A DNA stretch of 64,000 nucleotides, taken from positions 62,001 to 126,000 of the IMG/VR virus record IMGVR_UViG_3300045135_002615. One strand, 5' to 3'. The translations under genes were made by a program, and so were the position numbers. Below the pieces are notes generated by a model. It made no database searches. It worked only from the letters and a program-made list of their open reading frames with translations, and had not been told where the DNA came from. Of the stretch, positions 40,980 through 53,502 are shown piece after piece (positions within the stretch are counted from its first letter, which is position 1; every line of letters begins with the position of its first letter).

Positions 40980-41213
40980 ATGCTCTCACCTAACCCCATA
41001 GATGGTTCGTAAATAAAGTCTACCAAGTGCCCCCCCCCTACCCTCACTGACACTTAAATAGTTGTTGACACACCCACACACGAAGATGTGGTGGTATGTC
41101 GGTGTCTACAGGGTGACATACGCTTCGAGTATAAAAAGACTATTGAGAGTTAAACCGACACGAAAAATGAGAGCGTTGAGTTGAGTTGGGTTCTAAGGGT
41201 AGGTATTGGGTCA

Positions 41214-41226
41214 GTAGGTTATTTAT
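41214..41226 (+). promoter_or_regulatory. Late-promoter motif GTA-GGTTA-TTTAT
   Basis: 45 nt upstream of ATG 41271. Confidence 0.6.
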
Positions 41227-41270
41227 ATGCGTATGGTGTGTAGCCCCTTAGAACTATTGAGGAGAGAGAG

Positions 41271-41687
41271 ATGGCTAAACACGCAGAGAGAGAGATGGGC
41301 TTATTGCCTATCATGAATCCGCTATACAACTTGAGAGAGATCTCGAAGCAGATGGCGTTATTGGAGGATCACTTGAATCACCCTCGCAAGAGGTGTCCTG
41401 ATTGTATTAGGAAGCACTTCTTGACGATAGAGGCATTATTTGAGGAGGCGGTATCCTTGGACAAGGAGGGTAAGTATGTGGAGTTGCTTGATGGCAAGGC
41501 ACAGGAGATGAGAGATTTACAGGGGGCGTGGCTTGACGGCAGGGATGGTAGGGATGCGGACAAGGTATATATGGTAATAGCTCAGGGTATCCGTGCGATG
41601 CGTAAGGAGTTTGCCCCTATGTGTTTTGATGTGCGTAAGTTGGCTTCGTTGAGGGTAGCGAGCAGGTATCTTCTTAGGCGGAGGTGA
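41271..41687 (+). CDS. Helical CxxC protein (NLREISKQ..LLEDHL...RCPDCIRKHF)
   Basis: GAGGAG SD; late motif at 41214-41226; basic tail RKLASLRVASRY. Confidence 0.75.
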   Translation: MAKHAEREMGLLPIMNPLYNLREISKQMALLEDHLNHPRKRCPDCIRKHFLTIEALFEEAVSLDKEGKYVELLDGKAQEMRDLQGAWLDGRDGRDADKVYMVIAQGIRAMRKEFAPMCFDVRKLASLRVASRYLLRRR

Positions 41688-41697
41688 GTGGGGTTTC

Positions 41698-42954
41698 TTA
41701 GTATCTTCTTCTTAGGCGAGAATCCTGACGGCTGAACCCTTTAGGGAGGGTAGCACCTGTGAGATCAGCTCCACTGAGGTCTGCTCCACTGAGGCCAGCG
41801 TGACTGAGGCCAGCGTGACTGAGGTCTGCTCCACTGATTTTAGCGTATTCAAGGTCAGCGTGACTGAGGTTAGCATCATTGAGTTTAGCCCCATTGAGTT
41901 CAGCACCATTGAGTTTAGCCCCATTGAGTTCAGCCCCATCGAGTTTAGCCCCTTTGAGGTTAGCTTCACTGAGGTTAGCTTCAATGAGCTGAGCATCATA
42001 GAGTTTAGCTTTAGTGAGGTTAGCACCATTGAGATAAGCTCCTGTGAGATCAGCATAACTGAGGTCAGCCCCACTGAGGTCAGCTCCTGCGAGTTTAGCT
42101 TTAGTGAGGTTAGACCCCATGAGGTAAGCCTTAGTGAGCTTAGCCTTAGTGAGGTTCGCCCCTGTGAGTTTAAACCTAACGAGGTTAGTTCCACTGAGGT
42201 CAGCGTGACTGAGGTTCGCCCCATTGAGTTCAGCCTCATAGAGTTTAGCCCCTGTGAGTTTAGCCCCTGTGAGATCAGCATCTGTGAGATCAGCCCCCTC
42301 AAGGTTGGCTCCACTGAGGTCAGCCTTACTGAGATCTGCATCTGTGAGGTCAGCCTTTCTGAGATCAGCACCCTTGAGGTTAGCGTTATTGAGCTCAGCA
42401 TCTGTGAGATCAGCTTCAGTGAGGTTAGCCCCACTGAGATCAGCCTTACTGAGCTTAGCTCCTATTAGGTCAGCCCCTCTGAGATCAGCATCTGTGAGAT
42501 CAGCCTTACTGAGATCAGCGTTATTGAGATAAGCATCTGTGAGATCAGCCCCTCTGAGATCAGCACCCTTGAGGTTAGCGTTATTGAGCTCAGCGACAGT
42601 GAGATCTGCATCAGTGAGATCTGCATCAGTGAGGTCAGCCTTTGTGAGGTTAGCCCCTCTGAGGTTAGCCCCTCTGAGCTTAGCCCCAATGAGCTTAGCC
42701 CCAATGAGATCAGCCTTACTGAGCTCAGCCTCACTGAGATCAGTCCAACTGAGATCAACACCACTGAGATCAGTCCAACTGAGGTCAAGACCACTGAGGT
42801 CTTGACCTGAGAAGTCTTTCTCCCCCTTAGCGAGTGCCTCCACTAGGGACTCCCTAGTGTGCTTAAGATTGCCCTTTAGGGAGGCTTGCTTCTCTAGATG
42901 AGAGATACGGTTTTCGATTTGAGCGATTTTTTGACTGGTTGTTAAGTGTCTCAT
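41698..42954 (-). CDS. Pentapeptide-repeat protein carrying the conserved leader (protein D)
   Basis: About 70 A(D/N/K/E)Lxx repeats after MRHLTTSQKIAQIENRISHLEKQA. Confidence 0.95.
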   Translation of the reverse strand: MRHLTTSQKIAQIENRISHLEKQASLKGNLKHTRESLVEALAKGEKDFSGQDLSGLDLSWTDLSGVDLSWTDLSEAELSKADLIGAKLIGAKLRGANLRGANLTKADLTDADLTDADLTVAELNNANLKGADLRGADLTDAYLNNADLSKADLTDADLRGADLIGAKLSKADLSGANLTEADLTDAELNNANLKGADLRKADLTDADLSKADLSGANLEGADLTDADLTGAKLTGAKLYEAELNGANLSHADLSGTNLVRFKLTGANLTKAKLTKAYLMGSNLTKAKLAGADLSGADLSYADLTGAYLNGANLTKAKLYDAQLIEANLSEANLKGAKLDGAELNGAKLNGAELNGAKLNDANLSHADLEYAKISGADLSHAGLSHAGLSGADLSGADLTGATLPKGFSRQDSRLRRRY

Positions 42955-42997
42955 GAGTGAGTCCTTTCTTAGTTGAGTTGGTTAAGGTATAGATAAA

Positions 42998-43036
42998 TTA
43001 AAAAGGCGACCCGCTTCCTTGACTAGGAAGAGGTCT
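42998..43036 (-). terminator. Probable terminator of the leftward 43-47 kb operon
   Basis: GACC.CTTCCT...AGGAAG..GGTC stem then T-tract on the minus strand, right after the stop at 43040. Confidence 0.6.
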
Positions 43037-43039
43037 GTT

Positions 43040-43396
43040 TTAGTCCGCGTGGGTGATCTTTACGTTGTAGTCACCGCCCATGTCGTATGAAGGGATATGT
43101 AGGGTCATCCCCTCCCATGTGACGAGGCGGGGGTCAGTATAAACAAAGAGAGCATCCTCAGCATCCTCCTCATCACAGAGATGCTCAGGGCAGATAAGGA
43201 GAATGCCTGATTGAAGATAGAGGGTATCACCTGTAGACAGATGATAGTGACCGACCCCCAACCTAATGGCTACTAGAGGTGTGTGCCCGCCGACATAGAA
43301 CAGATTAGCTTGACCTTTGTTGGGGGTATTCTCCAATAGAGTCTCGATATGTTCCTCAGCAATAGCGTGTATGGGGTCTCCGAGATAGCACTTCAT
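43040..43396 (-). CDS. Hypothetical protein
   Basis: Start moved to 43396 (AAGGA SD just after the upstream stop). Confidence 0.6.
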   Translation of the reverse strand: MKCYLGDPIHAIAEEHIETLLENTPNKGQANLFYVGGHTPLVAIRLGVGHYHLSTGDTLYLQSGILLICPEHLCDEEDAEDALFVYTDPRLVTWEGMTLHIPSYDMGGDYNVKITHAD

Positions 43397-43400
43397 TAGT

Positions 43401-43811
43401 TTAATCCTTCTTAAGGAACTTGACTTGGTGGGTTGCAGGCTTGTTAGGCAACCTGTTGAGGAGTTGGTCCACCTCAGCTTGAGGGGCTTCCTTATAGAGA
43501 GCCCATCTGAGGTTGCGGCTCTCGGCAATGTACTTCTCATAGAGATCAATGCCGAGTGCTTCAATGAGTTGATCCCTTGACAGCCCCTCTAGGGAGACCG
43601 AGGGTCGTTGAGGTACAACGAGAGCCTTTGAGCGGATACCATTAAAGGTAATGGTCTCTTGTCCGTCACCTGTGTGGTCAATGAGCTCTTGTTTAAAGTC
43701 CCGTACAATGTCTTGAGCGAGGTGGCTGAGATACCACAGCTTAGAAGCGGCATCAATGCGGTGCTCAAGAGGTGCGTTCGTGTCTTGCACGATGTCAAAG
43801 AGATAGTTCAT
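43401..43811 (-). CDS. Hypothetical protein
   Basis: GGAGG SD; ATGA overlap with the upstream gene. Confidence 0.7.
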   Translation of the reverse strand: MNYLFDIVQDTNAPLEHRIDAASKLWYLSHLAQDIVRDFKQELIDHTGDGQETITFNGIRSKALVVPQRPSVSLEGLSRDQLIEALGIDLYEKYIAESRNLRWALYKEAPQAEVDQLLNRLPNKPATHQVKFLKKD

Positions 43812-44374
43812 GTCACCACCTCCCACTCATGGTACCACCTTGTCCTTGAAGTGCGATTTGTTGTCGCTGCGACCACAGGACCAAGTGATAGGGTAACCTC
43901 ATACTGAGCCCCACTCTTAGCCCCTTTGATAGTGACCTTCGAGCCCACGGGGATCGTCTCTAAGTTGTCAAAGAACGCCTTGACTGAGGCGAGTTCATTT
44001 TTTTCAGGGATGCGGTACTTGAGCTTTTTGAGCTCAACACGCCGCGTGTGTTTTGCAGGTTGGTTAGGGTGCCCTAAAACAACTAGGTCATCTTCCTTAT
44101 GGAGAATGAAGAAGTCCATACCCTTGAGGTACCCACTCGTCACAGAGACAGGTGTACCTACTTCAAGGGGTAGATTCTTGTAGTAGTCCTTAATCTCTTT
44201 GACCACCTTCCTCACAGGCTTGGGGTCATGGTAGGTGGTAGCCACATCAAGGCTGATACCACACAGAGGTTGCTCAACTAAGTCAATGTCATATCCATCA
44301 GGGTTGGTGCCGTTCATGGCGTAGTAGTTGATGCAGATCTGCTCCGCGAGGAGCTTGTTCTTGTTAAAGTCCAT
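43808..44374 (-). CDS. Paralog 3 of a tandem family (conserved N-cap plus SH3/KOW-like barrels)
   Basis: MDFNKNKLLAEQICINYYAMNGTNPDGYD...KEIKDYYKNLPLEVGT. Confidence 0.75.
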   Translation of the reverse strand: MDFNKNKLLAEQICINYYAMNGTNPDGYDIDLVEQPLCGISLDVATTYHDPKPVRKVVKEIKDYYKNLPLEVGTPVSVTSGYLKGMDFFILHKEDDLVVLGHPNQPAKHTRRVELKKLKYRIPEKNELASVKAFFDNLETIPVGSKVTIKGAKSGAQYEVTLSLGPVVAATTNRTSRTRWYHEWEVVT

Positions 44375-44964
44375 TATGACACCACCTCCAGCTCACAGGT
44401 GAGCCGATGAGGTCCCCATGTAGCATCCTTATCCTCAGCGACTCGAACATACAAGTTGTTCGGCTCAACCTCAATAACCCACCTTAACCCATCGAACGAA
44501 GGTGAGGTCACCTTGTCACCGACAGAGATATCTTTATGTTGGTACTCGACCTCGTCCTTGTTAAGAGGGCGAGACCTGAGCTGAGAGATCTTAACCCATG
44601 TGGTTGACACATAGGAGGTGAGGGGGCTCTCAGACTTTGGGTAGTCAAATGAGACCAAAGCATTGTCGCCCAAGACTTTTAAGATAATAGCCTGAGCCCC
44701 CTTGTACCTCCCCGACTTTGGCACAACAGTAGTACCTACCTCAAGGGGTAGGTTCTTGTAGTAGTCCTTGATCTCCTTGATCATCTTCTTAGCGACACTA
44801 GGTGTGCTGTAGGTGGTAGCCACATCAAGGCTGATACCACAAAGGGGGTAACCCACTAAGTCAATGTCATATCCATCAGGGAAGGTACCATGCATGGCGA
44901 AGTAGTTGATGCAGATCTGCTCCGCGAGACGGCGGTTGGCATCTTTGAATGGGTAGTCAATCAT
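44374..44964 (-). CDS. Paralog 2 of the tandem family
   Basis: LAEQICINYFAMHGTFPDGYD...KEIKDYYKNLPLEVGT. Confidence 0.75.
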   Translation of the reverse strand: MIDYPFKDANRRLAEQICINYFAMHGTFPDGYDIDLVGYPLCGISLDVATTYSTPSVAKKMIKEIKDYYKNLPLEVGTTVVPKSGRYKGAQAIILKVLGDNALVSFDYPKSESPLTSYVSTTWVKISQLRSRPLNKDEVEYQHKDISVGDKVTSPSFDGLRWVIEVEPNNLYVRVAEDKDATWGPHRLTCELEVVS

Positions 44965-45530
44965 GAGAGCACCTTGAGTTCCTCAGTTAAGAAGGTGAGA
45001 CCGTATAAAGCTTTGGGGTCGGGGCTGACGATGACTTTAAGTCCTTCAACTTTAATCACAAACATCACCTCACCCAACACATCCACCTTCGTACCAACCG
45101 CAGGAGGTGTCTTGGGGATCCAAAAGGTCTCCCCTCTAACGAGCGGGCGAGCCTTTACCTTCGCTGCCTTAACCCACACATACGACATGTAATCAAATTT
45201 CTGCCCAACATATGGGTCGAGGGTCACCAAGAGATGTCCATTTGACTTAATGATGACGTTTCCATTCCTGAAGCCACCATACATACGACCTGCATTGTAG
45301 GTAACAGCAAGACCCTCTGTGATGGGGAGATTCTTGTAGTAAATATTAATCTCCTTGACCACCTTACGCACCTCTGTGATTGGGGCATAATCCTCGACCT
45401 CCTTGAGGTTCATTCCACATAATGCTGTAGTAGATAAGGTGGGGTCATACCCATCAGGGTTGGTGCCGTGCATGGCGAAGTAGTTGGCACTAATGGTTTC
45501 AGAGAGTTGTAAATTCTTGTTAAAATCCAT
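44961..45530 (-). CDS. Paralog 1 of the tandem family
   Basis: MDFNKNLQLSETISANYFAMHGTNPDGYD...KEINIYYKNLP; AAGGAG SD. Confidence 0.75.
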   Translation of the reverse strand: MDFNKNLQLSETISANYFAMHGTNPDGYDPTLSTTALCGMNLKEVEDYAPITEVRKVVKEINIYYKNLPITEGLAVTYNAGRMYGGFRNGNVIIKSNGHLLVTLDPYVGQKFDYMSYVWVKAAKVKARPLVRGETFWIPKTPPAVGTKVDVLGEVMFVIKVEGLKVIVSPDPKALYGLTFLTEELKVLS

Positions 45531-45541
45531 GTTCATTCTCC

Positions 45542-45994
45542 TTATGCGTTGCGGTAGTCAAGGACAAGAGCAAGGACATCAGACTGAGCCCAACCCATTG
45601 AAGGGATGAATGTAGCCTGCTCACCTTGCTTGATGATGTCACCTGACAAGACACAGGTGACATCACACTTGACCTCGTGGACGGTTGCAGTTGAGAGCCC
45701 CGCTGAACGAGGGATCTTGATCTTCTTGAGATCTACCCCCCTGTCCTGCCCCATCTTGATGATTTCCGCCTTCACCTTGCGAGCCTCCTTGCGAGCCTCC
45801 TTGATCTCCTCCTTCTCACCTAAGCAGGCGGAGCGGAGGGGACACCCCTGACATACAGGGTCTGTCTTAACCCCCTTAGTGAAGCAAGGGGTAGCCCTCA
45901 TCATCAAAGCCATAGTGGTAGGGCATGAGGGGTCATAGAGGCTAGAGACAGCCTCGTTTGTTGCGTTCTCGATTTGCTTGTACTCGTTCATCAT
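45542..45994 (-). CDS. Cys-rich (Zn or Fe-S) protein
   Basis: CFTKGVKTDPVCQGCPLRSAC; AAGGAG SD. Confidence 0.65.
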   Translation of the reverse strand: MMNEYKQIENATNEAVSSLYDPSCPTTMALMMRATPCFTKGVKTDPVCQGCPLRSACLGEKEEIKEARKEARKVKAEIIKMGQDRGVDLKKIKIPRSAGLSTATVHEVKCDVTCVLSGDIIKQGEQATFIPSMGWAQSDVLALVLDYRNA

Positions 45995-46014
45995 GATGAT
46001 GTTCTCCTTTTCAA

Positions 46015-47154
46015 TCACATGTCAATGGGGGTAGGGGCGTCAACACTCTGCTCGTTGACAACGTCTGAGCTGAGGTAGGTGTCGATAGCACCCTGTAAGG
46101 CATCACGGTTGTGGTCCTCCATGAGGTGACCAACCACGCTCTCAAAGGTGTCCTTGAGAGCGTGGTTGAAGGTGTCTGCAAGACCCTCTGCGAGCCAATC
46201 AAGTGCGAGGCGACCCCACATCTTTGCTTGACGCAGCGTGACCTCGATACCCATGCGATCCTCGTGGCTTACACGGCGAACCGCACGAATACAATCAGAG
46301 AGGGTTTGCACCTCAAGCTCTGTGAGGACAGGGAAGGCAGCGGCGATCACCTTCTTCTCAAACGCTTGGGTGTGAGGTGGGACCATCACCGCTGAGAGGC
46401 GTGAAAGGAAGCTCGCATCCTTCGGGCGGGTGATGTTGCCACGACCCCCATCCCCATCAGCACCTGAATTGGAGGTGAGGATAACGCGAGTACCCTTGAG
46501 GACAGGGAACATCTTACCCGTCACAGGGTGGGCGATCTTCTCCTTGTCAAGCTCAGTCGTTTGGCGGAGGAACTCGACCTGCTCAGGGGTGGCTCGGTCA
46601 TAATCACTAAAGAGGATGATTGAGGGGACGGTGATCTTGAGAAGCCCCTTGTCGTCAAGCCTCTCCACCTTGTAGTTCTCCTCCTCCATCTGCTTGATGA
46701 GATCCTCACGAACCTCACTCTCAAGAGAGGAGAGATCACGCACACAGCTCACACCGCGTGTCGCACGGAGGAGATCACCATCAGTGACCTTCGTCACCGA
46801 AGCTCCGCGAACCTCAACGAGCTCAACACGAGCAAGGTAGTCAGCAGGGTTGACGCCCACCTTGAAGGCGAAGCGGGCGAGGGGGCGGTTGGTGGCATGG
46901 GCGAGGGCATCTGTCCACACCTCCTTACCCGTGCCCGCCGTGCCGTTCACTACGAGGTGGCTCTTCTTCTGAAAGAATGTGGCGAGGCGGAGAGGGTTCT
47001 TGCTTGTGGAGGTGTCCTCCACATAGTCATCAGCTCGCTCGCCTGGTAGGTAGCCTGCGTCGATGATCTCCTGCTCGGTGAGAGGGGATACGACTCGCTT
47101 GATGCCGAAGAACGACACCGTCTGAAGTTTATTAAAGTTAGGTGCTGAACGCAT
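46015..47154 (-). CDS. MoxR/CobS-like AAA+ ATPase with non-canonical Walker motifs
   Basis: GTAGTGKE; ILFSDYDRA; sensor-1 LTSNS; D.SFLSRL arginine finger; partner vWA genes adjacent. Confidence 0.8.
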   Translation of the reverse strand: MRSAPNFNKLQTVSFFGIKRVVSPLTEQEIIDAGYLPGERADDYVEDTSTSKNPLRLATFFQKKSHLVVNGTAGTGKEVWTDALAHATNRPLARFAFKVGVNPADYLARVELVEVRGASVTKVTDGDLLRATRGVSCVRDLSSLESEVREDLIKQMEEENYKVERLDDKGLLKITVPSIILFSDYDRATPEQVEFLRQTTELDKEKIAHPVTGKMFPVLKGTRVILTSNSGADGDGGRGNITRPKDASFLSRLSAVMVPPHTQAFEKKVIAAAFPVLTELEVQTLSDCIRAVRRVSHEDRMGIEVTLRQAKMWGRLALDWLAEGLADTFNHALKDTFESVVGHLMEDHNRDALQGAIDTYLSSDVVNEQSVDAPTPIDM

Positions 47155-47231
47155 CTATAGTTTCCTTTGTGTTAGGTGTTAGTGGTAGAGGCGATCAGTG
47201 CCTCTCTTGCTTACTTATATAAAGTAGAGAT

Positions 47232-47287: not shown

Positions 47288-47330
47288 AGGAGACGCACAG
47301 TGTGTCTCCTACTCAATGACAGGAGACACA
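47288..47330 (+). promoter_or_regulatory. Two mutually exclusive hairpins at the RBS of the CobT-like gene
   Basis: AGGAGACGCA - TGTGTCTCCT - AGGAGACACA(TG). Confidence 0.65.
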
Positions 47331-49018
47331 TGAAAACTGACAAAGACAAAGACTACACGAAGCGTGACCCTCTCGCCTTCGCACAAGGGGCGTTTAAGGG
47401 TATCCTTAGCCACCTCCCACCAGGTGTACAGGTGAGACGGGGTGGTAATACATTTGCGATTGGGGCTAGGTTCCCTTGGCTCTGCTTCGCCTCCGCCATG
47501 AGCAGGGGCTCATCTCGGATCAGCGAAATATACTCCAACGCTGAGTACTATTACAGGAGGGGGTCGGAGAGTGTGGTGCTCTACCTCCCTGCCCCCTCCG
47601 CCGCAGGGGTGAGCACCATCAATGCCTCCGCAGCGGTGGGTGGTGGAATGCACGAGGCGGGGCATGGTATCTGTGATTGTGCAAACGACCCAATGCCGAC
47701 CCTTCAGGAGTTTAAGAACAAGGTGGGCAAGCACATCCGAGCGGATGTGAACTACATGAAGGCTGAGATCTTCAAGTGGACGAACGTCTACGCGGACATT
47801 CGCCTTGAGAACGGAATGGCTAAGCTCTTCCCCCTCACGAAGGTTCGCTTCTTCGCTATTCAGAAGTGGATCCACACCCTTGAGTCTAAGGGTCGTGGTA
47901 AGACCTTCGCGGGAGACTTCCTCATGGCTCTTAGAGATAAGGGCAAGGGGTGGGTCAACGAGGAGAGCGAGGCGGTCTATCAAGAGTACTCACAAGATGC
48001 CCGTGACCTAGTAGACGAGATGGAGGAGTACATCAAGATGGTTCTCCCCAAGACCACCGATTGGACTACGACTGCACACACGCCGTTGCTCGCGGCGATC
48101 TTGACCATCAACAAGCTCCATGACATGAAGCAAGAGCAAGAGAAGGAGCAAGAGAAGGAGCAACAGGAGCAGAGTCAACAGGAGCAGAGTCAACAGGAGC
48201 AGAGTCAACCTGACGATCAGTCTCAAGGTAGTGGTGACTCACAAGGTGAGGGTCAAAGCTCTCAGCAAGAGTGTGATCAATCTCAAGGTGGTCAGGGTGG
48301 TCAAGAGAGTGGTGGTCAAGAGAGTGGTGGTCAAGAGAGTGGTGATCAAGAGAGTGGTGATCAAGAGAGTGGTGGTCAAGAGAGTGGTGATCAAGAGAGT
48401 GGTGGTCAAGAGAGTGGTGATCAAGAGAGTGGTGGTCAAGGTGATCAAGAGAGTGGTGGTCAAGGTGATCAAGAGAGTGGTGGTCAAGCTCAAGGCGGTC
48501 AAGGAGGGCTAGACGACCTGCTCAACTCAAACAGAGGTGACCTCATGGACACTGCCAAGAAGTCACTAAGTGACCTCTCCAATGACCGCCTCTCAGATGG
48601 TATGAGAGACCTCCTTAATGAGAAGGTAGATGAGGCTCTTGAGGAGGTTGAAAAATACCTTCAAGGAGACAAGGATGCTCTCAGTGATCTTACTCAGATG
48701 GAGAAGCTCATATACATTCATGCCCTTGAGATGATCAAAGACGCTCTAGAGAGTGGTGACGATGAGGCTCTTGAGGAGGCACTCAAGAAGTTACTCCAAC
48801 AACAGGGCGAGGGCGAGGAGAAGGGTACAGAGGCAGGTAAGGAAGAGACCCAATGGATTGACATCGACAGCCTCCTTGATGGTCAGGGTGAAGTCCTCGA
48901 CCCCTCATCAGCCATGAAGAAGGACTTTAAGGCTCAAGAGGCACTCCTTGACCACAAGGTCTATGTGCCAAATGGCATCCCCATGATTCGCTCTAAGGTC
49001 AACCCCCGTATCCGCTAA
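47330..49018 (+). CDS. CobT-like N-terminal protein (HExxH) with acidic QESGG/QESGD linker
   Basis: MHEAGH; TNVYADIRLE; AGGAG SD before ATG at 47330. Confidence 0.7.
   Translation: MKTDKDKDYTKRDPLAFAQGAFKGILSHLPPGVQVRRGGNTFAIGARFPWLCFASAMSRGSSRISEIYSNAEYYYRRGSESVVLYLPAPSAAGVSTINASAAVGGGMHEAGHGICDCANDPMPTLQEFKNKVGKHIRADVNYMKAEIFKWTNVYADIRLENGMAKLFPLTKVRFFAIQKWIHTLESKGRGKTFAGDFLMALRDKGKGWVNEESEAVYQEYSQDARDLVDEMEEYIKMVLPKTTDWTTTAHTPLLAAILTINKLHDMKQEQEKEQEKEQQEQSQQEQSQQEQSQPDDQSQGSGDSQGEGQSSQQECDQSQGGQGGQESGGQESGGQESGDQESGDQESGGQESGDQESGGQESGDQESGGQGDQESGGQGDQESGGQAQGGQGGLDDLLNSNRGDLMDTAKKSLSDLSNDRLSDGMRDLLNEKVDEALEEVEKYLQGDKDALSDLTQMEKLIYIHALEMIKDALESGDDEALEEALKKLLQQQGEGEEKGTEAGKEETQWIDIDSLLDGQGEVLDPSSAMKKDFKAQEALLDHKVYVPNGIPMIRSKVNPRIR
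48302..48487 (+). repeat. 15-bp tandem repeat CAAGAGAGTGGTG(G/A)T encoding QESG(G/D)
   Basis: About 11 copies read directly; preceded by three QQEQS-coding repeats. Confidence 0.9.
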
Positions 49019-49054
49019 TCACACCCACACACAAACCCCTAAAGGAGGGAACAC

Positions 49055-49873
49055 ATGACACAACGTAAAACAAAAGAACTCATCGCTAAGATGAACAAGA
49101 GCGTCAACAAGCTACGCCGCGAGCTTGAGGTGCAGAACCTCGCAGAGGGTACTCACTACATGGGCACACAGCTCAACCGATCAGCCCTCGTCAAGGGCGT
49201 GGTTCAAGCTAAGGTTCATATGCAACCCCGCGACCTCTACCACAAGGTCTACCGTGACCCTGATGTCGATGCCGCCTTCTCCTTTGCAATCGACAGCTCA
49301 AGCTCGATGCATTGGAACTACACCCCAGAAGGCACTGACTATTGGAAGGAGTGTCACTACCTACTAGACGCACTCCACCTCACGCTTGATCGTATCGGCA
49401 TCAAGACCGCCTCTGCCTCTGCGGGCTACTCAGGGAGTTATTATGAAAAAGGGGCTACGGGTGCTTCCACATCACTCACACCTGTCGCAAAGGTCTACAA
49501 GGAGTTCCATGAGAGATGGACTCCAAGTAGCTACAAGAAGTTCACCCTCAAGGCGAACAGCGGAACGTGCATCATCTCATGGGCGGAGGTTGCATGGCAA
49601 CTCGCTCGTGAGAGCGATGCTCAATACCGCATGGCGTTCTTCCTCACTGATGGAGAGGATATTGGAGCACGACCTTACCTTGAGAGTATGAGGGTTCAAG
49701 CCCTCTCTGAGGGTATCATCCTTGTAGGTATCGGACTTGGAATGAGCGGGGTCGGATTACCAAATGGTATCAGCGGTCTAAATGCTGAGCAGATTTCCGC
49801 ACATATGCTCGATCACTTGTATAAGATCATCAAGGCAGGTGGTCAAGCATCTGTCGAGACCAAAGTGGGCTGA
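49055..49873 (+). CDS. Stand-alone vWA (CobT C-terminal-like) domain protein
   Basis: MIDAS DSSSS, T (NSGT), FFLTDGE; own AAAGGAGG SD. Confidence 0.85.
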   Translation: MTQRKTKELIAKMNKSVNKLRRELEVQNLAEGTHYMGTQLNRSALVKGVVQAKVHMQPRDLYHKVYRDPDVDAAFSFAIDSSSSMHWNYTPEGTDYWKECHYLLDALHLTLDRIGIKTASASAGYSGSYYEKGATGASTSLTPVAKVYKEFHERWTPSSYKKFTLKANSGTCIISWAEVAWQLARESDAQYRMAFFLTDGEDIGARPYLESMRVQALSEGIILVGIGLGMSGVGLPNGISGLNAEQISAHMLDHLYKIIKAGGQASVETKVG

Positions 49874-49910
49874 CCATTGGGGTCGCCCCCTTAACCATTG
49901 GAGTTCCATT

Positions 49911-50264
49911 ATGGACACTTCTAAAAGCAAGCTCCTTCTCCTCTCCTCTCTCAAGCTTCAAGGACCTCTCACGGCGATTGAGGCGGCCGAGACCCTCGGT
50001 GGTGACTACTCCTCTGTGTACTCACAGCTTCAGTCCCTCACCATCGCGGGCATGATCCGCAAGGTCGGCACTCGCAAGAACGCCACCTACGAGCTCGTGG
50101 AGAACTTCTCTATCTCTCCCTCAGAGGGCATCGCCCTCATGGAGCACCTCAAGGCTAACACCGACGAGGTCAACCGCCTGGAGCTGATCGTGAAGCACAA
50201 GAAGGCTGAGCTTGAGGTCACCCGTGACGCTATCAAGTCGATGATCGAGGATCACCTCAACTGA
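49911..50264 (+). CDS. Winged-HTH DNA-binding protein with C-terminal coiled coil
   Basis: LTAIEAAETLGGDYSSVYSQLQSL..AGMI.K; GGAG SD. Confidence 0.75.
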   Translation: MDTSKSKLLLLSSLKLQGPLTAIEAAETLGGDYSSVYSQLQSLTIAGMIRKVGTRKNATYELVENFSISPSEGIALMEHLKANTDEVNRLELIVKHKKAELEVTRDAIKSMIEDHLN

Positions 50265-50293
50265 TAGAACCGCTCACAACGTGACCGCTCCCT

Positions 50294-50356
50294 GAGCCCC
50301 CCTCTCTCCCACACGCCCCCTCAAGGGCAGGGTTGAGAGGGGGGCTCTTTTTTTTT
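50294..50356 (+). terminator. Strong rho-independent terminator
   Basis: Perfect 13-bp stem GAGCCCCCCTCTC / GAGAGGGGGGCTC plus T-tract. Confidence 0.85.
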
Positions 50357-50430
50357 CATTAAGCCCCTCCGCCCACTAATGAAATCAGATAATGGAGACA
50401 CAACACACACATGACACAAGGACAGCACAC

Positions 50431-50943
50431 ATGCAGAAGTACACACAAGTCAAACTCTCCAATCAGGACAAGGGCTACACCTTCACTCTCGATTACACCA
50501 TCCCTTACCGCCAGGTACTCCTTGAGCGAGTACGCCGCCTTGAGTGGTTCATCAACAACAACTCATTAGAGCAGGCTACAAGCCTCATCCAAGAGGTTTT
50601 GGGCGACAGGGCTACCATCACCACCAAAGAGGTTGATAAGGCTCTTAGAGGACAGAAGGGGATGCTCACGAGTCACTACCTCTCACTTGAGGGTAAGAAC
50701 AACCTCGGACCTCGCAACCTCCCACTCACTCGTCACGAGGGTACACCCATCATGACCGATGCTGAAGGCGGTGAGTGGGTGCGTGGTGTCGTGGTTGACG
50801 GGCGTGTACCCCGCCTCCGTAACGTCACTAACAGCCTCTCTATGATTCGACTCATCGTTGAAGCCAAACTTGAGCTGCCCATCTACACCAGGTGGCGGCT
50901 CCAATCAGGCGATGAGACCGTTGACCGCAACCCTATCAACTAA
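50431..50943 (+). CDS. Hypothetical protein (start could be 50392)
   Basis: ORF with block-typical C-ending codons; AAGGA SD. Confidence 0.65.
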   Translation: MQKYTQVKLSNQDKGYTFTLDYTIPYRQVLLERVRRLEWFINNNSLEQATSLIQEVLGDRATITTKEVDKALRGQKGMLTSHYLSLEGKNNLGPRNLPLTRHEGTPIMTDAEGGEWVRGVVVDGRVPRLRNVTNSLSMIRLIVEAKLELPIYTRWRLQSGDETVDRNPIN

Positions 50944-50955
50944 GGAACACTACAC

Positions 50956-51195
50956 ATGGCACTCACCAAAGACACGTTCAAGACACCCCTCAAGCGTATC
51001 GTCACAGGCACAATCGACCTTGACGGCTTCACTCTCCATCAGGTAGCCATCACCCAAGACGACTACCAAGCACTCATCGAGTTCACCAAGGTCGCATCTA
51101 ACGTCACCCTCGTAGACTCCCCCGCTGTGCTTGAGGTCGGGGATACCATCATCACACCAACTACGCTCACTCAGCTCATCAAGGAGAACACCTAA
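50956..51195 (+). CDS. Hypothetical protein
   Basis: AAGGA SD; coupled to the next gene. Confidence 0.65.
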   Translation: MALTKDTFKTPLKRIVTGTIDLDGFTLHQVAITQDDYQALIEFTKVASNVTLVDSPAVLEVGDTIITPTTLTQLIKENT

Positions 51196-51968
51196 TGGCT
51201 AACCTCTTTGCAACCATCATGCGTGACAACATCACCTTCGTCCTCCAAGACAGGACGCTGAAGAAGAAGGACATCCTCACTGAGTACTGCACCCACCAAG
51301 GCGTCGCTGACAAGGAAGCGTTCGGACACCTACCCTCTGGCGGTAGCCTCCTTGAGTCCAATGCCACCAATACGCTTACATGGCTCATCAAGGCGGGTAC
51401 GATCAAGTCACCTAAGCGAGGCGTCTATCAGATGGTCGAGGGGGTCGCTCCTGCAACTGCCTTTACAAAGCACGCTCTCAACGAAGAGACACACGATGAC
51501 GCAGAGACCTCTCAAGAGACCCTACCAAGCCTTGAGGAGTACCTAGAGGAGCAACCCCTCCACACCCTTGAGCATGAGCTCATGTCTACTCTTGAGTTCC
51601 ACCCTCTCCATCTCAAGTACACGCTCCAAAGCGGCGAGGTCGTTGAAGGCAAGTTCATGGTGTCACGCACACCCGATGCCTTCGTCATCACTCAGAAGGG
51701 GCGTAAGGACTCTGTCCTCGTACCCGTCAATGACCTCGTCAGTACTGACCCTGAGATCCAAGCCTTCGCGGACACCGTCAAGAATGACTTCGACCACGCA
51801 GGCTCTCACAAGGGGGCTGCCAACCGACTGCTCAAGATGCTGCTCATCTGTGGACTCAAGCATGAGCACGAAGACCCCCTCGCAGGCTTCGTGGCTCCAT
51901 GCCCTGACCTCTGCCCCATCCAAGAGCTGTGGGCAGGTAAGGCTCAGATCATCAAGGAGAGCATCTGA
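51195..51968 (+). CDS. Protein with N-terminal winged-HTH-like segment
   Basis: LTWLIKAGTIKSPKRGVYQM; AAGGAG SD. Confidence 0.6.
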   Translation: MANLFATIMRDNITFVLQDRTLKKKDILTEYCTHQGVADKEAFGHLPSGGSLLESNATNTLTWLIKAGTIKSPKRGVYQMVEGVAPATAFTKHALNEETHDDAETSQETLPSLEEYLEEQPLHTLEHELMSTLEFHPLHLKYTLQSGEVVEGKFMVSRTPDAFVITQKGRKDSVLVPVNDLVSTDPEIQAFADTVKNDFDHAGSHKGAANRLLKMLLICGLKHEHEDPLAGFVAPCPDLCPIQELWAGKAQIIKESI

Positions 51969-52777
51969 TGAAGCACCTCATCGGCATGAACCTCACCCAA
52001 GCTAAAGAGGCTCTCAAGCGTGAACAGGGCGTCAAGAGGATGGGGGAGAACCGCTTCCAAGCACTCCTCAACAAGGCAATCTCTATGGGTCAGATCGCCC
52101 TTCAAGGTGACCTCATCACTGCACCCTCAGCATCCATCTTCGGGGAGACACCCTCCACTGAGACACCCAAGCCCAAGAGTGATGAGGGTACTAACCCCCT
52201 CCCTGTCAGAGCACCCCTCCCTAATGAGCTCTCTGTCGATCACCTCATCGCCCCTCGCTCATGTCCAACCACCATCACCGATGACATCCACAAGGTCAAC
52301 GCATGGCTCAAGGACATCAGCGAGGAGGCAAGGTGGCACGGGATCACCAACTTCCATGCTACCGCCACTCACCCTGAACACCCTCAAGGTGGTGGGTCGG
52401 TGTCCTTCACTCAAGACGATTCACACCCTGTCAACACCCTCAACGCTCACGCTCTCGCTCTTCTCGGTCTCACTGATCAAGCCGTACCCGACCTCTCAGA
52501 GCTACCCCGCCTCGGTGACCTCTACCACTACCGCACCTATCAAGGAAACATCGTTCAAGGTGAGGTGCTCGGTGTCTACTGCTTCATGGAGGTTGCCAAC
52601 CCTGACGGCTCCTATCAAACCGTGAGCCTCACTGAGGCGGCGGTCAAGAAGAACAAGACACCCAAGCCATACAGCCTCACTACATACCTCAGCGACAACC
52701 GCAAGCTCACCGCTGAGCGTGACCGACTGCTCAAAGAGATCGAGGAGCTCAAGGCTCTTAAGGAGGGGCTCTCTTGA
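51968..52777 (+). CDS. Hypothetical multidomain protein
   Basis: TGATG coupling; C-terminal coiled coil. Confidence 0.65.
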   Translation: MKHLIGMNLTQAKEALKREQGVKRMGENRFQALLNKAISMGQIALQGDLITAPSASIFGETPSTETPKPKSDEGTNPLPVRAPLPNELSVDHLIAPRSCPTTITDDIHKVNAWLKDISEEARWHGITNFHATATHPEHPQGGGSVSFTQDDSHPVNTLNAHALALLGLTDQAVPDLSELPRLGDLYHYRTYQGNIVQGEVLGVYCFMEVANPDGSYQTVSLTEAAVKKNKTPKPYSLTTYLSDNRKLTAERDRLLKEIEELKALKEGLS

Positions 52778-52989
52778 TGATCGACCTACTCACCGCCACC
52801 AAGTACTCATGGAGCTTCACGGGCGTCCTCGTTGCCCTCGTCATCGCCCTCACCATCTCGACCTACAACGACCTACAAGACAAAGTCGAAGCCCCCCTCC
52901 TCCGTGTCACTGGCTACGCTGTCACCCTCAGCCTCGTGCTCTCTATGAGCTACCTGATCGTGTCTCTGTCTAGGTGGGCTCTATCTTGA
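52774..52989 (+). CDS. Small two-TM membrane protein
   Basis: Two hydrophobic segments; AAGGAGG SD. Confidence 0.65.
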   Translation: MMIDLLTATKYSWSFTGVLVALVIALTISTYNDLQDKVEAPLLRVTGYAVTLSLVLSMSYLIVSLSRWALS

Positions 52990-52990
52990 G

Positions 52991-53128
52991 CGGGCGTAGC
53001 CCCTCGCCCTGCGGTCGGGCGTAGCCCCCCTCGCCCCTGCGGTCGGGCTCGATCTGCCAGAACCGCGTTAAAAAACGCGGGGTTGATGGCGGGGGTCCCA
53101 AATTGCCATATTGAAAACGCATTGAAAA
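52991..53128. repeat. GC-rich direct repeats, inverted repeat and phased TTGAAAA pair
   Basis: CGGGCGTAGC(C)nTCGC(C)nTGCGGT x2 (52991-53043); CCGCGTT/AACGCGG (53063-53080); TTGAAAA at 53111 and 53122. Confidence 0.8.
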
Positions 53129-53181
53129 TGTGACCCCGAATTTGGAACCATGTTTATAAAGAGGGTTGAAAGGACACACAC

Positions 53182-53502
53182 ATGACACTATCAAGAATAC
53201 ACAACGGAAGAAGAGAGTGGACACCACTAGCCAAACTGAGACTTAAGAGAGAGGGGGGGAGTATCTCTCCTAGCTTTGGTCAAGAGTTATTAGTTGAGCT
53301 AGAGTCCTGTAGCTTTGAAAATTATGGTCAAGCGGCATTTATGAAAGACGACTCAGGAGTATGGCTTAAGTATCATGGACCTAGTAATGGGGTGATACTC
53401 TATTGTCGCAACACACAGAAGTCAATGACATACAAAGAGATGGGTGACCTCATTAACTTATGGGGAGACATCCGTACCTTGTGGAGAGAGAGTAAAGGTT
53501 AA
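53182..53502 (+). CDS. Hypothetical protein
   Basis: AAAGGA SD; isolated ORF. Confidence 0.6.
   Translation: MTLSRIHNGRREWTPLAKLRLKREGGSISPSFGQELLVELESCSFENYGQAAFMKDDSGVWLKYHGPSNGVILYCRNTQKSMTYKEMGDLINLWGDIRTLWRESKG

What the first reader, a model, noticed from the sequence alone, without database searches (positions are those of the whole stretch)
41000..53500. Symmetric G/C skew switches at about 41.1, 47.2 and 53.1 kb: candidate 12-kb terminal repeat or paired origins
Seen, from hand counts per 60-nt line on the + strand: 40441 has 30 C/5 G, 41461 has 6 C/22 G, 52861 has 24 C/10 G, 54181 has 4 C/27 G. The + strand is G-rich near 46-47.2 kb and C-rich over 47.3-53 kb. At 53.1 kb genes are on + on both sides, so coding-strand bias cannot explain that flip. 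The two C-to-G switches lie about 6 kb either side of the divergent centre at 47.24 kb, each in a long non-coding gap, and the skew seems to fade with distance. Established: T5 and SPO1 have long direct terminal repeats (about 10-13 kb) carrying first-expressed host-takeover genes. Inference: 41.1-53.1 kb is a collapsed terminal repeat bounded by terminase or nick sites, or two strand-displacement origins.
Basis: partly seen in the sequence, partly recalled or inferred. Interest (0 to 1): 0.72.

Follow-up and report, generated by a model that had tools for sequence, protein, structure and literature searches.

The report
Outward G-rich operons flanking phage module
In a clade of ~300-kb aquatic jumbo phages, the genes that run outward from both edges of a variable 8–30-kb gene block have swapped almost all their C for G on the sense strand for several kilobases. 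The pattern is conserved and looks selected. It is not shown to mark a terminal repeat, and its function is unknown.

Summary
The skew switches are real. There is no real skew switch at 47.2 kb, only a gene-orientation divergence.

The skew follows transcription units. It is sense-strand G-richness in units running outward from the block edges:
- It starts at a conserved promoter-like site and decays over 1–6.5 kb.
- It affects all codon positions and the untranslated parts.
- It spares an embedded opposite-strand gene.

At four-fold sites it is a pure C→G exchange (C −0.11, G +0.11, A and T unchanged), so it is not deamination or replication-type mutation bias.

At least 12 independently assembled relatives (GC 38–50 %) show it, at homologous protein positions but with different reach. 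More distant homologs lack it.

A collapsed terminal repeat is not supported. The block is single-copy in all assemblies, and close relatives show no depth step at 41.07 kb. One 1.7-kb contig inside the block has 2× depth, which remains unexplained.

Best guess (about 0.3): selected R-loop-prone tracts, possibly transcript-primed start zones. The main rival is Rho-proofing.

The parts
36193..40392 (-). 5' 1400 codons of the 2924-aa giant ORF: strongly G-rich, C-poor sense strand
   Evidence: pos3 GC skew is 0.46-0.74 and pos3 C fraction 0.06-0.14. Four-fold sites: A .22, C .05, G .40, T .33. 70 % of codons contain no C.
31618..36192 (-). 3' 1524 codons of the same giant ORF: ordinary composition, used as an internal control
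   Evidence: pos3 skew is -0.20 to +0.29. Protein conservation equals that of the 5' half, 0.48 vs 0.44 to L001. Weak fold matches to phage tail-fibre and baseplate proteins.
40407..40979 (-). 190-aa Gly/Val/Ala-rich gene, first gene of the leftward skewed unit
   Evidence: pos3 skew is +0.59. Homologs in L006, L007 and L004 are also skewed, +0.32 to +0.67. No Pfam or PHROG hit.
40980..41270 (.). Divergent intergenic region holding skew switch 1 at about 41,075. Both untranslated leaders are already skewed.
   Evidence: 100-nt profile. The left leader has sense skew +0.48 and the 41271-gene leader +0.44. A run of nine G on the sense strand sits at 41030-41038.
41127..41148 (-). Conserved promoter-like block at the onset of the left skew (core AATAGT-N-TTTTTATACT)
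   Evidence: Aligned in WIN, L001, L002, L004, L009 and L010, and preceded by hairpin plus T-run terminators in L001 and L004. It is the top PWM hit in the genome. The same motif class lies upstream of unskewed genes.
41271..41687 (+). 138-aa gene diverging from the left unit, also with a G-rich sense strand
   Evidence: pos3 skew is +0.52. Its L006 homolog is 78 % identical with pos3 skew +0.40.
41698..52989 (.). Central variable module. Contents: pentapeptide-repeat gene 41698-42954(-); three tandem paralogs 43808-45536(-); AAA+ ATPase-like 46015-47154(-); divergent intergenic 47155-47278; acidic-repeat protein 47279-49018(+); further + strand genes to 52989. GC is raised (0.53-0.57 from 45.5 kb) and codons are C-ending.
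   Evidence: Pfam hits: Pentapeptide 2e-114; AAA_5 and Sigma54_activat weak; Mrr_N weak. Four-fold sites have C .42 and G .125. The module is 8 kb in G1, 12 kb in L006 and about 30 kb in G2. No bounding direct or inverted repeats. No AAA homolog found in the outgroup LR745208.
52991..53095 (+). GC-rich (0.72) 28-nt tandem repeat (2.2 copies) plus a short hairpin at the end of the central module; terminator-like
   Evidence: Sequence, Tandem Repeats Finder, composition.
53182..55810 (+). Rightward skewed unit(s): genes 53182-53502, 53671-54321 (true ATG at 53671) and 54386-55810 (membrane protein). A promoter-like site lies at 53617-53638.
   Evidence: pos3 skew is +0.16, +0.77 and +0.57. Intergenic pieces are +0.25 and +0.26. 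Four-fold sites: A .21, C .08, G .39, T .33. PWM hit at 53617. No homologs in L006, although the same position is skewed there.
55813..56880 (-). Embedded opposite-strand gene that is exempt from the skew
   Evidence: pos3 skew is +0.02 on its own sense strand. Its L006 homolog is 36 % identical with pos3 skew -0.25, within 1.2 sd of the mean.
56969..58020 (+). Fading tail of the rightward skew. Gene 56969-57646 is a paralog of 54386-55810.
   Evidence: pos3 skew is +0.25 and +0.17, then about 0 beyond 58.9 kb. Paralogy: 27 % identity, E = 2e-16.

Best explanation
WHAT IT IS (shown; confidence about 0.9). The window comes from a contractile-tailed jumbo phage from seawater. In its clade, a variable central gene module of 8-30 kb is flanked on both sides by transcription units that run outward and whose sense (non-template) strand has exchanged C for G. 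The exchange begins at a conserved promoter-like site, is strongest in the first 1-3 kb and fades by 1-6.5 kb depending on lineage. It affects leaders, intergenic spacers and all three codon positions, and it has reshaped the amino-acid composition of a conserved 2900-3100-aa virion-type protein. It is maintained across lineages whose synonymous sites are saturated. It therefore reflects a persistent position- and direction-specific pressure, most simply selection on the transcript or on the transcribed DNA, and not protein function, codon adaptation or replication-type mutation bias.

HOW IT MOST LIKELY WORKS (inferred; about 0.3). A G-rich non-template strand downstream of a promoter is the classic sequence determinant of co-transcriptional R-loops. 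I propose that these tracts make transcripts leaving the module re-anneal to the C-rich template, producing kilobase-scale RNA:DNA hybrids with a displaced G-rich strand. The symmetric outward arrangement would then give paired, transcript-primed start zones for DNA synthesis or recombination. The phage has a family-A polymerase, as in ColE1 priming, and in T4 one R-loop origin lies inside a tail-fibre gene (both from my own knowledge). Alternatively the tracts could act as topological or termination barriers around the module.

The confidence value given for this field (0.32) refers to the mechanistic part.
For: - Uniqueness and size of the skew.
- Tie to transcription units:
  - onset at a conserved promoter-like block in six lineages;
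  - skewed leaders and spacers;
  - exempt opposite-strand gene in WIN and L006;
  - the divergent gene 41271-41687 is G-rich on its own sense strand.
- Position rather than protein:
  - homologous alignment columns are skewed in some lineages and not in others;
  - the right-block genes are non-homologous between WIN and L006, yet both are skewed;
  - the paralogs 54386 and 56969 differ according to distance from the boundary.
- Not mutation of the usual kinds: at four-fold sites within the same gene in 12 genomes, C falls by 0.107 and G rises by 0.109, while A changes by -0.009 and T by +0.007.
- Conservation and polarity: seven homologs, eleven IMG/VR loci, and whole genomes G1 and G2.
- The trait is derived and arose in situ: the outgroups are flat, and the skewed half is collinear with the outgroup protein at E = 1e-19.
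- R-loop plausibility: in a nearest-neighbour estimate, the left tract has the genome's largest RNA:DNA-over-DNA:DNA advantage, -0.12 to -0.16 against a mean of -0.045 kcal/mol per step. The right tract is within roughly the top 5-15 %.
- A PolA gene is present.
Against: - There is no direct evidence for R-loops or for initiation here.
- These RNAs are translated, which normally suppresses R-loops in bacteria.
- No RNase H gene was found.
- G-clusters are no denser than composition predicts, and there are no canonical G4 motifs. The G9 run in the window's leader is not conserved in relatives.
- Hybrid stability should also favour A over U, yet A and T are untouched.
- The right tract's thermodynamic advantage is unremarkable.
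- The left unit's promoter class is shared with the prohead-protease region and the giant protein looks virion-like, so the unit may be late, whereas origin firing is usually early.
- The genome-wide gene-orientation minimum lies in the module only in this genome, not in G1 or G2.
- Kilobase length is much more than known phage or plasmid R-loop origins need.
Confidence: 0.32

Rival explanations
1. Rho-proofing or directional insulation. Rho loads on C-rich, G-poor, unstructured nascent RNA. Exchanging C for G makes the outward transcripts poor Rho substrates where the RNA is most often ribosome-free, near the 5' end before coupling is established. It also makes any inward (antisense) transcript an ideal Rho substrate, which would shield the module from read-in transcription.
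For: The signature is exactly a C-versus-G exchange with A and T untouched, which matches the known C>G determinant of rut sites (established knowledge; see also PMC9160355, found). The polar decay from the start site fits exposure of the RNA before the first ribosome catches up. Predicted sense RNA keeps normal structure (-28.7 kcal/mol per 120 nt), while the antisense RNA is C-rich and nearly unstructured (-13.3). The embedded opposite-strand gene is exempt.
Against: This does not explain why only these units are treated so. Other giant genes and other genes with the same promoter class are not. The host is unknown and may lack Rho; cyanobacteria do, and several weak matches point to cyanophage-like proteins. 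The extreme degree, with 70-80 % of codons lacking C, seems more than translated genes need.
Confidence: 0.2
2. One reading: 41.1-53.1 kb is a collapsed long direct terminal repeat of T5/SPO1 type, and the skew switches mark its boundaries or the adjacent first-entering DNA.
For: A 1,696-nt contig at 42,565-44,260 in the probable source run has word depth 38, against 18.6 for the 83-kb contig to its left (2.04x), and that segment is not repeated in the assembly. The block holds many small, variable genes, like host-takeover modules. The genome closes on itself with a 212-nt near-identical overlap, which is compatible with a collapsed repeat. The phage has PolA, as T5 and SPO1 do (the comparison is from my own knowledge).
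Against: Skew is not evidence for a repeat, and it is explained by transcription units. In two runs with about 92 % relatives, depth is equal on both sides of 41.07 kb. The 2x contig begins inside the pentapeptide gene, not at a skew switch, and its mean may be inflated by repeat k-mers. Neighbouring small contigs read 32x and 69x. The block is single-copy in four IMG/VR genomes, and no assembly ends at the boundaries except L008, which starts 255 nt upstream of the giant gene. The centre varies from 8 to 30 kb.
Confidence: 0.07
3. Mutational replication skew: two strand-displacement or bidirectional origins leave the displaced or leading strand G-rich through single-strand damage.
For: The polarity fits: the + strand is C-rich on the left and G-rich on the right, and the cumulative G-C minimum lies at window 53,078. 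The skew fades with distance.
Against: The exchange is C->G and T does not rise, so it is not deamination. The opposite-strand gene inside the right zone is unaffected. Gene 41271-41687 has the opposite + strand sign to its left neighbour. Third-position skew split by gene strand shows no replication-type signal anywhere in the genome. The onset coincides with a promoter, not with a point origin, in lineages where the upstream genes are co-oriented.
Confidence: 0.04
4. Arrays of oriented G/T-rich recombination or translocase signals (Chi- or KOPS-like) protect or orient processing of the central module against nucleases or motors that approach from outside.
For: The G-rich strands are oriented so that an enzyme moving toward the module meets them from the 3' side, as Chi requires (established knowledge). 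The left tract is 66 % G+T, and frequent hexamers resemble Chi-like GTGGTG or GGTGAG.
Against: No oligomer of 5-7 nt is over-represented beyond Markov expectation or shared between the left and right tracts or with relatives. The right tract's common words are different and A/G-rich. A DNA-level signal should not respect transcription-unit borders or spare the opposite-strand gene.
Confidence: 0.06
5. A translational codon class: these genes are tuned to the phage's own tRNAs, which mostly read purine-ending codons, or to slow translation.
For: Eleven phage tRNAs (Val-TAC, Thr-TGT, Gly-TCC, Glu-TTC, Lys-TTT, Arg-CCT/TCT, Leu-TAG and others) read codons that are enriched in the skewed genes.
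Against: Untranslated leaders and spacers are skewed too. First and second codon positions and amino-acid content shift as well. The bias decays inside a single ORF, and does so at different points in different lineages.
Confidence: 0.05

Closest known systems
GC-skewed R-loop-forming tracts (vertebrate CpG-island promoters; immunoglobulin class-switch regions)
   Same: A G-rich non-template strand that starts just downstream of a promoter. Kilobase scale with variable length. About 37-46 % G and few C on the sense strand. Skew rather than GC content is the variable.
   Different: Here the tracts are protein-coding and translated, in a bacteriophage. G-clustering is no more than composition predicts. 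R-loop formation is untested.
Transcript-primed origins (ColE1 RNA II; T4 oriF and ori(34); mitochondrial OriH/CSBII). Comparison from my own knowledge.
   Same: A promoter followed by a G-rich RNA / C-rich template segment. A family-A polymerase is available. T4 ori(34) also lies inside a tail-fibre gene. The outward orientation would launch synthesis away from the module.
   Different: Known origins use tens to hundreds of bases, not 1-6.5 kb. No DNA unwinding element or RNase H gene was identified. Origin activity is not shown.
Replication-associated GC-skew switch at bacterial and phage origins (Lobry-type)
   Same: A sign change of skew with the G-rich strand pointing away from a centre, and a cumulative-skew minimum at the switch.
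   Different: The skew is local rather than replichore-wide and 5-10 times stronger. It follows gene orientation, and it is a C->G rather than a C->T signature.
Long direct terminal repeats carrying early or host-takeover genes (T5, SPO1; XacN1 with 66-kb DTRs, PMC5852040)
   Same: A 10-kb-scale block of small, variable genes with its own divergent promoters, in a large PolA phage.
   Different: No second copy, fixed termini or depth step at the proposed borders was found. The block size varies from 8 to 30 kb.
'Extreme GC skew' peaks over gene-transfer-agent and core genes in Alphaproteobacteria (PMC9836097)
   Same: Gene-cluster-specific skew that arises from preferring codons with G over C in phage-derived structural genes.
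   Different: That case is much milder, chromosome-embedded and aligned with the leading strand. It shows no polar within-gene gradient, and it too is unexplained.
Rho utilisation (rut) determinants / Szybalski's transcription-direction rule
   Same: The C/G ratio of the nascent RNA is the discriminating variable, and purines are enriched on the mRNA-synonymous strand.
   Different: The magnitude is far greater, and the effect is restricted to two unit sets flanking one module rather than being a genome-wide tendency.

Membership tests
Long direct terminal repeat (T5/SPO1 type) | Two-fold read depth over the whole repeat, with sharp steps at its borders | tested here: inconclusive
   Only contig-mean depths were available. 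One 1.7-kb contig (42,565-44,260) is at 2.04x. In runs X2 and X4, with about 92 % relatives, depth is equal on both sides of 41.07 kb.
Long direct terminal repeat (T5/SPO1 type) | Fixed physical termini (read-start pile-ups, or ends in long reads of virion DNA) | not testable with these tools
   The runs are held only as Logan contigs. No pile-ups were reported (table 6), but contigs cannot show them.
Long direct terminal repeat (T5/SPO1 type) | The repeat is present at both ends of uncollapsed or complete assemblies | tested here: not met
   The AAA gene of the block is single-copy and mid-contig in G001-G004. G001's 'DTR' is a 127-nt overlap. G002 has a 410-nt 96 % end overlap and WIN a 212-nt one. 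Short-read assemblies would collapse a true repeat, so this is weak.
Replication-origin mutational GC skew | The skew sign depends on position relative to the origin, irrespective of gene orientation | tested here: not met
   The opposite-strand gene 55813-56880 and its L006 homolog are unskewed. Gene 41271-41687 has the opposite + strand sign to the adjacent left unit. There is no strand-independent pos3 signal genome-wide.
Replication-origin mutational GC skew | Deamination-type spectrum (loss of C with gain of T on the exposed strand) | tested here: not met
   Four-fold-site changes are C -0.107, G +0.109, A -0.009 and T +0.007 in 12 genes.
R-loop-forming GC-skew tract / transcript-primed origin | G-rich non-template strand starting downstream of a promoter | tested here: met
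   The onset lies at a conserved promoter-like block, and leaders are skewed +0.44 to +0.48.
R-loop-forming GC-skew tract / transcript-primed origin | RNA:DNA hybrid thermodynamically favoured over the DNA duplex | tested here: inconclusive
   The left tract is the genome's extreme, -0.12 to -0.16 kcal/mol per step. The right tract is only -0.066 to -0.091, against a mean of -0.045.
R-loop-forming GC-skew tract / transcript-primed origin | G-clusters (initiation zone) or G4 potential at the start | tested here: not met
   GGG density equals the composition expectation and there are no canonical G4 motifs. The G9 run in the WIN leader is not conserved.
R-loop-forming GC-skew tract / transcript-primed origin | Detected RNase-H-sensitive hybrids, or replication starting there | not testable with these tools
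   Needs DRIP, in-vitro transcription or marker-frequency data. No isolate or host is known.
Rho-resistant transcripts | Nascent RNA that is C-poor and G-rich, with no C>G stretches | tested here: met
   The sense strand has C at 10-13 % and G at 33-40 %. The antisense RNA is the reverse and unstructured.
Rho-resistant transcripts | The host encodes Rho, and these units are transcribed by a Rho-sensitive polymerase | not testable with these tools
   The host is unknown. No psbA or HSP70 clues were found.
Chi/KOPS-like oriented motif array | A specific oriented oligomer over-represented beyond composition | tested here: not met
   Maximal-order Markov test for k = 5-7 in six tracts found no shared enriched word.

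The most novel reading that the evidence does not exclude
A clade of aquatic jumbo phages has evolved kilobase-long, protein-coding tracts resembling immunoglobulin switch regions. In them, selection for a G-rich non-template strand overrides codon and amino-acid preferences, so that transcripts leaving a variable central module form long R-loops. The paired R-loops would serve as outward-firing, transcript-primed replication or recombination start zones, or as barriers that isolate the module. This would be a way of encoding a DNA-level function inside conserved structural genes that has not been described in phages.
Probability: 0.25. Interest if true: 0.8.

Novelty: new variant of a known kind. 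Interest (0 to 1): 0.6.

Why it matters
Synonymous-site G-over-C skews of 0.6-0.9 are far beyond ordinary transcription- or replication-linked asymmetry. Here they are confined to a few kilobases, polar from a promoter, and conserved across genomes that share only 30-45 % protein identity. They show that a nucleotide-level requirement can remodel about 1,000-2,000 codons of a conserved virion protein.

The system is a natural experiment: the same gene has treated and untreated halves, there are treated and untreated clades, and the reach differs between lineages. That makes it usable for asking what strand composition does during transcription in bacteria and phages, whether through R-loops, Rho or topology.

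It is also a caution for phage genomics. Cumulative-skew minima and skew flips in large phage genomes can be produced by a few such units, and should not be read as origins or termini without read-level evidence.

Tried and rejected
- Assembly artefact or chimera: rejected. The pattern recurs in at least 12 independent assemblies from JGI, ENA/TARA, Logan and IMG/VR.
- Protein-domain composition: rejected. The two halves are equally conserved, and homologous columns are skewed or unskewed depending on lineage.
- Foreign origin of the skewed half: rejected. It is collinear with the unskewed outgroup protein.
- Cytosine or adenine deamination: rejected.
- Need for unstructured mRNA: rejected. 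Sense RNA folds almost normally, -28.7 vs -31.1 kcal/mol.
- G-quadruplexes or G-clusters: none beyond composition.
- Oriented motif arrays: none.
- Promoter class as the determinant: rejected. The same motif lies upstream of unskewed genes.
- Mobile-element borders: no direct or inverted repeats flank the block.
- Membership of the 'moraphage' lineage: not supported. No HSP70 or T4-type terminase N-domain was found.
- Searches that gave nothing:
  - Pfam and PHROGs on all skewed genes;
  - megablast against phages;
  - single-protein scans of IMG/VR;
  - ESM Atlas;
  - tRNA scan of the window;
  - RNase H and psbA in the genome.
- Structure prediction of the giant protein's C-terminal 1000 aa gave a mediocre model (pLDDT 58) and only weak tail-fibre or baseplate matches (TM <= 0.1), so it is a lead only.
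- Genome-wide gene-orientation divergence at the module: true for this genome but not for G1 or G2, so I dropped it as evidence for an origin.
- My first four-fold-site table had one gene misframed by 1 nt. It was redone cleanly with the same conclusion.

Full report
**1. Setting**

The window is bases 62,001-126,000 of a single 296,642-bp virus record: IMG/VR, rated 'linear', CheckV about 95 % complete, GC 47.2 %. Its first 212 nt recur at the end with two mismatches, so the assembly closes on itself.

It is a contractile-tailed jumbo phage. The identified genes are:
- Baseplate_J and gp25-like genes, and a family-A DNA polymerase, in the window;
- TerL, portal, prohead protease, DnaB-like helicase, RecD/Dda-like helicase and ribonucleotide reductase elsewhere;
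- eleven tRNAs.

Public runs that hold it are seawater, estuary and other aquatic metagenomes. The nearest GenBank record is the 485-kb uncultured phage LR745208.1, with TerL 64 % and PolA 48 % identical. The host is unknown.

**2. The observation**

In 1-kb bins the + strand skew reaches -0.61 at 39-40 kb and +0.47 at 54-55 kb. Against a background of 0.03 +/- 0.09 these are z = -7.1 and +4.8. In 2-kb bins no other place in the genome exceeds |0.25|.

The sign flips at about 41,075, inside the 291-nt gap 40980-41270, and at about 53,100-53,200.

The rest of the description is less accurate:
- 46-47.2 kb is not G-rich (+0.02 to +0.04).
- 47.5-49 kb is G-rich, because of a 15-nt tandem repeat in gene 47279-49018.
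- Only 49-53 kb is mildly C-rich.

So there is no skew switch at 47.2 kb. There is a divergence of gene orientation there, and in this genome it is the global minimum of cumulative orientation. The strong skew lies outside the proposed block.

**3. What carries the skew**

Everywhere it is the sense strand that is G-rich and C-poor. The skewed units are:
- the first ~1400 codons of a 2924-aa ORF (31618-40392, -);
- the 190-aa gene upstream of it (40407-40979, -);
- the divergent 138-aa gene (41271-41687, +);
- the + strand genes 53182-55810, with a weaker tail to about 58 kb.

Among 284 ORFs, third-position skew averages -0.03 +/- 0.18. These genes score +0.52 to +0.77 and are the only strong positive outliers.

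All three codon positions are affected, and so are untranslated leaders and spacers (+0.25 to +0.48).

The opposite-strand gene 55813-56880, which sits inside the right zone, is unaffected (+0.02). The upstream + strand genes of the central block have the opposite tendency, with pos3 C at 0.41-0.47. The flip separates two composition classes of + strand genes.

**4. Nature of the change**

Synonymous choices avoid C and prefer G:
- Leu TTR 0.69 vs 0.23;
- Ser AGT 0.41 vs 0.16;
- Ile ATA 0.45 vs 0.11;
- Thr ACG 0.48 vs 0.19;
- GAG and AAG above 0.9.

The cleanest control is within the giant gene itself. In 12 ingroup genomes, four-fold sites in the first 700 codons differ from those in the last 1200 by A -0.009, C -0.107, G +0.109 and T +0.007. 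Four outgroup genes show no difference.

This is a pure C-to-G exchange at constant GC and constant A/T. Cytosine or adenine deamination on an exposed strand would raise T, so the classical replication- or transcription-associated mutational skews are excluded.

The protein pays for it. G+V+E+D rises to 0.39-0.47 from 0.28-0.35. A+T+P+Q+H+N falls to 0.08-0.18 from 0.21-0.33. Between 67 and 80 % of codons contain no C.

**5. Conservation, polarity and origin of the trait**

Homologs of the giant protein (29-48 % identity) were recovered from JGI, ENA/TARA, Logan and IMG/VR contigs.

In every ingroup genome the third-position skew is maximal at the 5' end (+0.27 to +0.86) and decays with distance. 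The reach differs between lineages: about 300-1200 codons in L004, L002 and L009, about 1650 in the window and L001, and about 2200 in L008. At identical alignment columns some lineages are skewed and others are not, although both halves of the protein are equally conserved. The skew therefore depends on position from the 5' end, not on the protein domain.

The onset coincides in six lineages with a conserved promoter-like block. In two of them a hairpin plus T-run terminator precedes it, even where the upstream genes are co-oriented.

The whole arrangement recurs:
- in L006;
- in the complete relative G1 (312 kb, GC 38 %), with tracts at 130-134 kb and 142-146 kb around an 8-kb centre;
- in G2 (376 kb), with tracts at 330-332 kb and 362-364 kb around a centre of about 30 kb.

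The right-hand skewed genes of the window have no detectable homologs in L006, yet the same position is skewed there. The embedded opposite-strand gene is conserved and exempt. The paralogs 54386 and 56969 differ in skew according to their distance from the border.

More distant homologs are flat along their length. These are the ~3500-3660-aa proteins at 24-28 % identity and the one in LR745208.1. The skewed half of the window's protein is collinear with the outgroup protein (E = 1e-19). No homolog of the module's AAA gene or of the 54386 protein was found in LR745208.1.

The trait therefore arose in situ in the ancestor of this clade. As far as can be seen, it arose together with the central module.

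**6. The terminal-repeat idea**

There are no direct or inverted repeats at the block's borders and no large repeats anywhere in the assembly.

The single read-laying run returned only Logan contigs:
- In the probable source run, an 83,100-nt contig (depth 18.6) runs without mismatch from 42,387 leftwards through the 41.07-kb switch.
- A 1,696-nt contig covering 42,565-44,260 has depth 38 (2.04x).
- The break between them lies in the pentapeptide-repeat gene, where two small contigs read 32x and 69x.

A collapsed terminal repeat makes no branch in an assembly graph, so the long contig does not exclude one. However, the 2x contig starts 1.5 kb away from the skew switch, inside a gene, and its mean may be inflated by repeat words.

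In two other runs with about 92 %-identical relatives, contigs on either side of 41.07 kb have equal depth: 8.9 vs 9.7, and 3.1-5.5 vs 3.7-4.7. That argues against a step at that point.

The block's AAA gene is single-copy and mid-contig in four IMG/VR genomes. G001's 'direct terminal repeat' is a 127-nt assembler overlap.

I conclude that the skew is not evidence for a repeat and that a repeat bounded by the switches is not supported. The 2x contig remains unexplained. It could be a collapsed duplication, a sequence shared with a co-occurring phage, over-replication near an origin, or repeat inflation.

**7. Mechanism**

The facts to explain are these: sense-strand specificity; onset at a promoter; polar decay with lineage-specific reach; indifference to which proteins are encoded; a pure C->G exchange; symmetry around a variable module; persistence despite saturated synonymous sites.

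These point to selection acting on the nascent transcript or the transcribed duplex.

Tests of specific ideas:
- No over-represented oriented oligomer.
- No G4 motifs or excess G-clusters.
- The sense RNA is not unstructured, at -28.7 vs -31.1 kcal/mol per 120 nt. The antisense RNA would be, at -13.3.
- The left unit's promoter motif recurs upstream of unskewed genes, including the prohead-protease region. So promoter class does not determine the skew, and the unit may be late.
- The giant protein's C-terminal model matches tail-fibre and baseplate proteins only weakly.
- A nearest-neighbour estimate places the left tract at the genome's extreme for RNA:DNA-hybrid advantage. The right tract falls only in the upper 5-15 %.
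- No RNase H gene was found.

I rank selected R-loop-prone tracts first, at about 0.3. They might act as paired transcript-primed start zones or as barriers. Rho-proofing with antisense insulation comes second, at about 0.2, and it fits the C/G-only signature particularly well. Terminal-repeat, mutational-origin, Chi-like and codon-class readings each rank at 0.07 or less. A substantial remainder is 'something not yet thought of'.

**8. Comparison and novelty**

The closest analogues in how it might work:
- GC-skewed R-loop regions of vertebrate promoters and immunoglobulin switch regions;
- transcript-primed origins (ColE1, T4 oriF and ori(34), mitochondrial OriH). This comparison is from my own knowledge.

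The closest in kind is the unexplained 'extreme GC skew' produced by G-over-C codon choice in alphaproteobacterial GTA clusters (PMC9836097). That case is much milder and not polar.

My searches of the paper library found no description of kilobase-long, promoter-polar, synonymous C->G exchange in phage genes. I rate it a new variant of a known kind, namely transcription-linked strand asymmetry or GC-skew tracts.

It is also a practical warning. In this genome two such units set the cumulative-skew minimum, and standard practice would label that minimum an origin.

Noticed in passing
window 42565-44260: In the probable source run, a 1,696-nt Logan contig has word depth 38 against 18.6 for the adjoining 83-kb contig (2.04x). 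The segment is not repeated in the assembled genome.
   Followed up: partly
genome 1-212 and 296431-296642 (window -61999 to -61788 and 234431-234642): The contig ends overlap by 212 nt at 99 % identity (two mismatches), which is not a clean assembler k-mer overlap. IMG/VR calls the record 'linear'. G002 shows a similar 410-nt, 96 % end overlap.
   Followed up: partly
window 41698-42954 (-): A 418-aa protein that is almost entirely pentapeptide repeats (Pfam 2e-114; about 70 copies of a 15-nt period). Weaker relatives lie at genome positions ~4.2 kb and ~9.2 kb. Its pos3 skew is -0.36 on the sense strand.
   Followed up: partly
window 43808-45536 (-): Three tandem paralogous genes (188, 196 and 191 aa; 578-nt period; up to 89 % identical over 120 nt), with no family assignment.
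   Followed up: no
window 47279-49018 (+), repeats at 48134-48488: A 579-aa protein with a long acidic Gln/Glu/Ser/Gly repeat encoded by near-perfect 15-nt tandem repeats. By eye it and its neighbours (AAA+ 46015-47154; 49055-49873) recall the CobS/CobT/vWA-type trios seen in large phages. Pfam gave only weak AAA_5 and Sigma54 hits and nothing for the other two.
   Followed up: partly
window 47155-47278: The central divergent intergenic region carries a G7-N12-C7 hairpin, a second short hairpin and a TATAAATA box that abuts the annotated start. The real start of gene 47279 may lie downstream.
   Followed up: no
window 41271-41687 (+): This 138-aa protein is 78 % identical to its L006 homolog, whereas neighbouring proteins are 30-50 % identical. 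It is unusually conserved, of unknown function, and sits exactly at the skew switch.
   Followed up: no
window 45500-53000: The central module has raised GC (0.53-0.57) and strongly C-ending codons (four-fold C 0.42, G 0.125), the opposite of its flanks. The same contrast is seen in L006 and G2.
   Followed up: partly
genome 20640-21735, 233276-233788, 287199-287534: Eleven tRNA genes in three clusters, mostly with anticodons that read purine-ending codons (Val-TAC, Thr-TGT, Gly-TCC, Glu-TTC, Lys-TTT, Arg-CCT, Arg-TCT, Leu-TAG).
   Followed up: partly
upstream of many genes, e.g. window 53648, 62179; genome 20378, 183649, 238283: A recurrent arrangement of a TATAAT-like box, an ACACACA-rich leader and an AAGGAG ribosome-binding site. 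An (AC)n run directly follows a tRNA-like 3' end at genome position 20378.
   Followed up: partly
G1 (L047-L062) 302-304 kb, and ORFs at 4319, 6940 and 239116; G2 ORF at 138018: Relatives have a few additional small genes or regions with pos3 skew above 0.4, away from the central module. The trait may therefore not be strictly limited to the two flanks in every genome.
   Followed up: no
LR745208.1 284981-289924: The outgroup's PolA match is split into three pieces spread over 4.9 kb for an 867-aa query, which suggests intervening sequences (introns or inteins) in that polymerase gene.
   Followed up: no
L008 (JGI Ga0194129_10000281) position 1: This 102-kb contig begins only 255 nt upstream of the giant gene, inside the small upstream gene. 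It is the only relative's contig that ends near the left switch.
   Followed up: no
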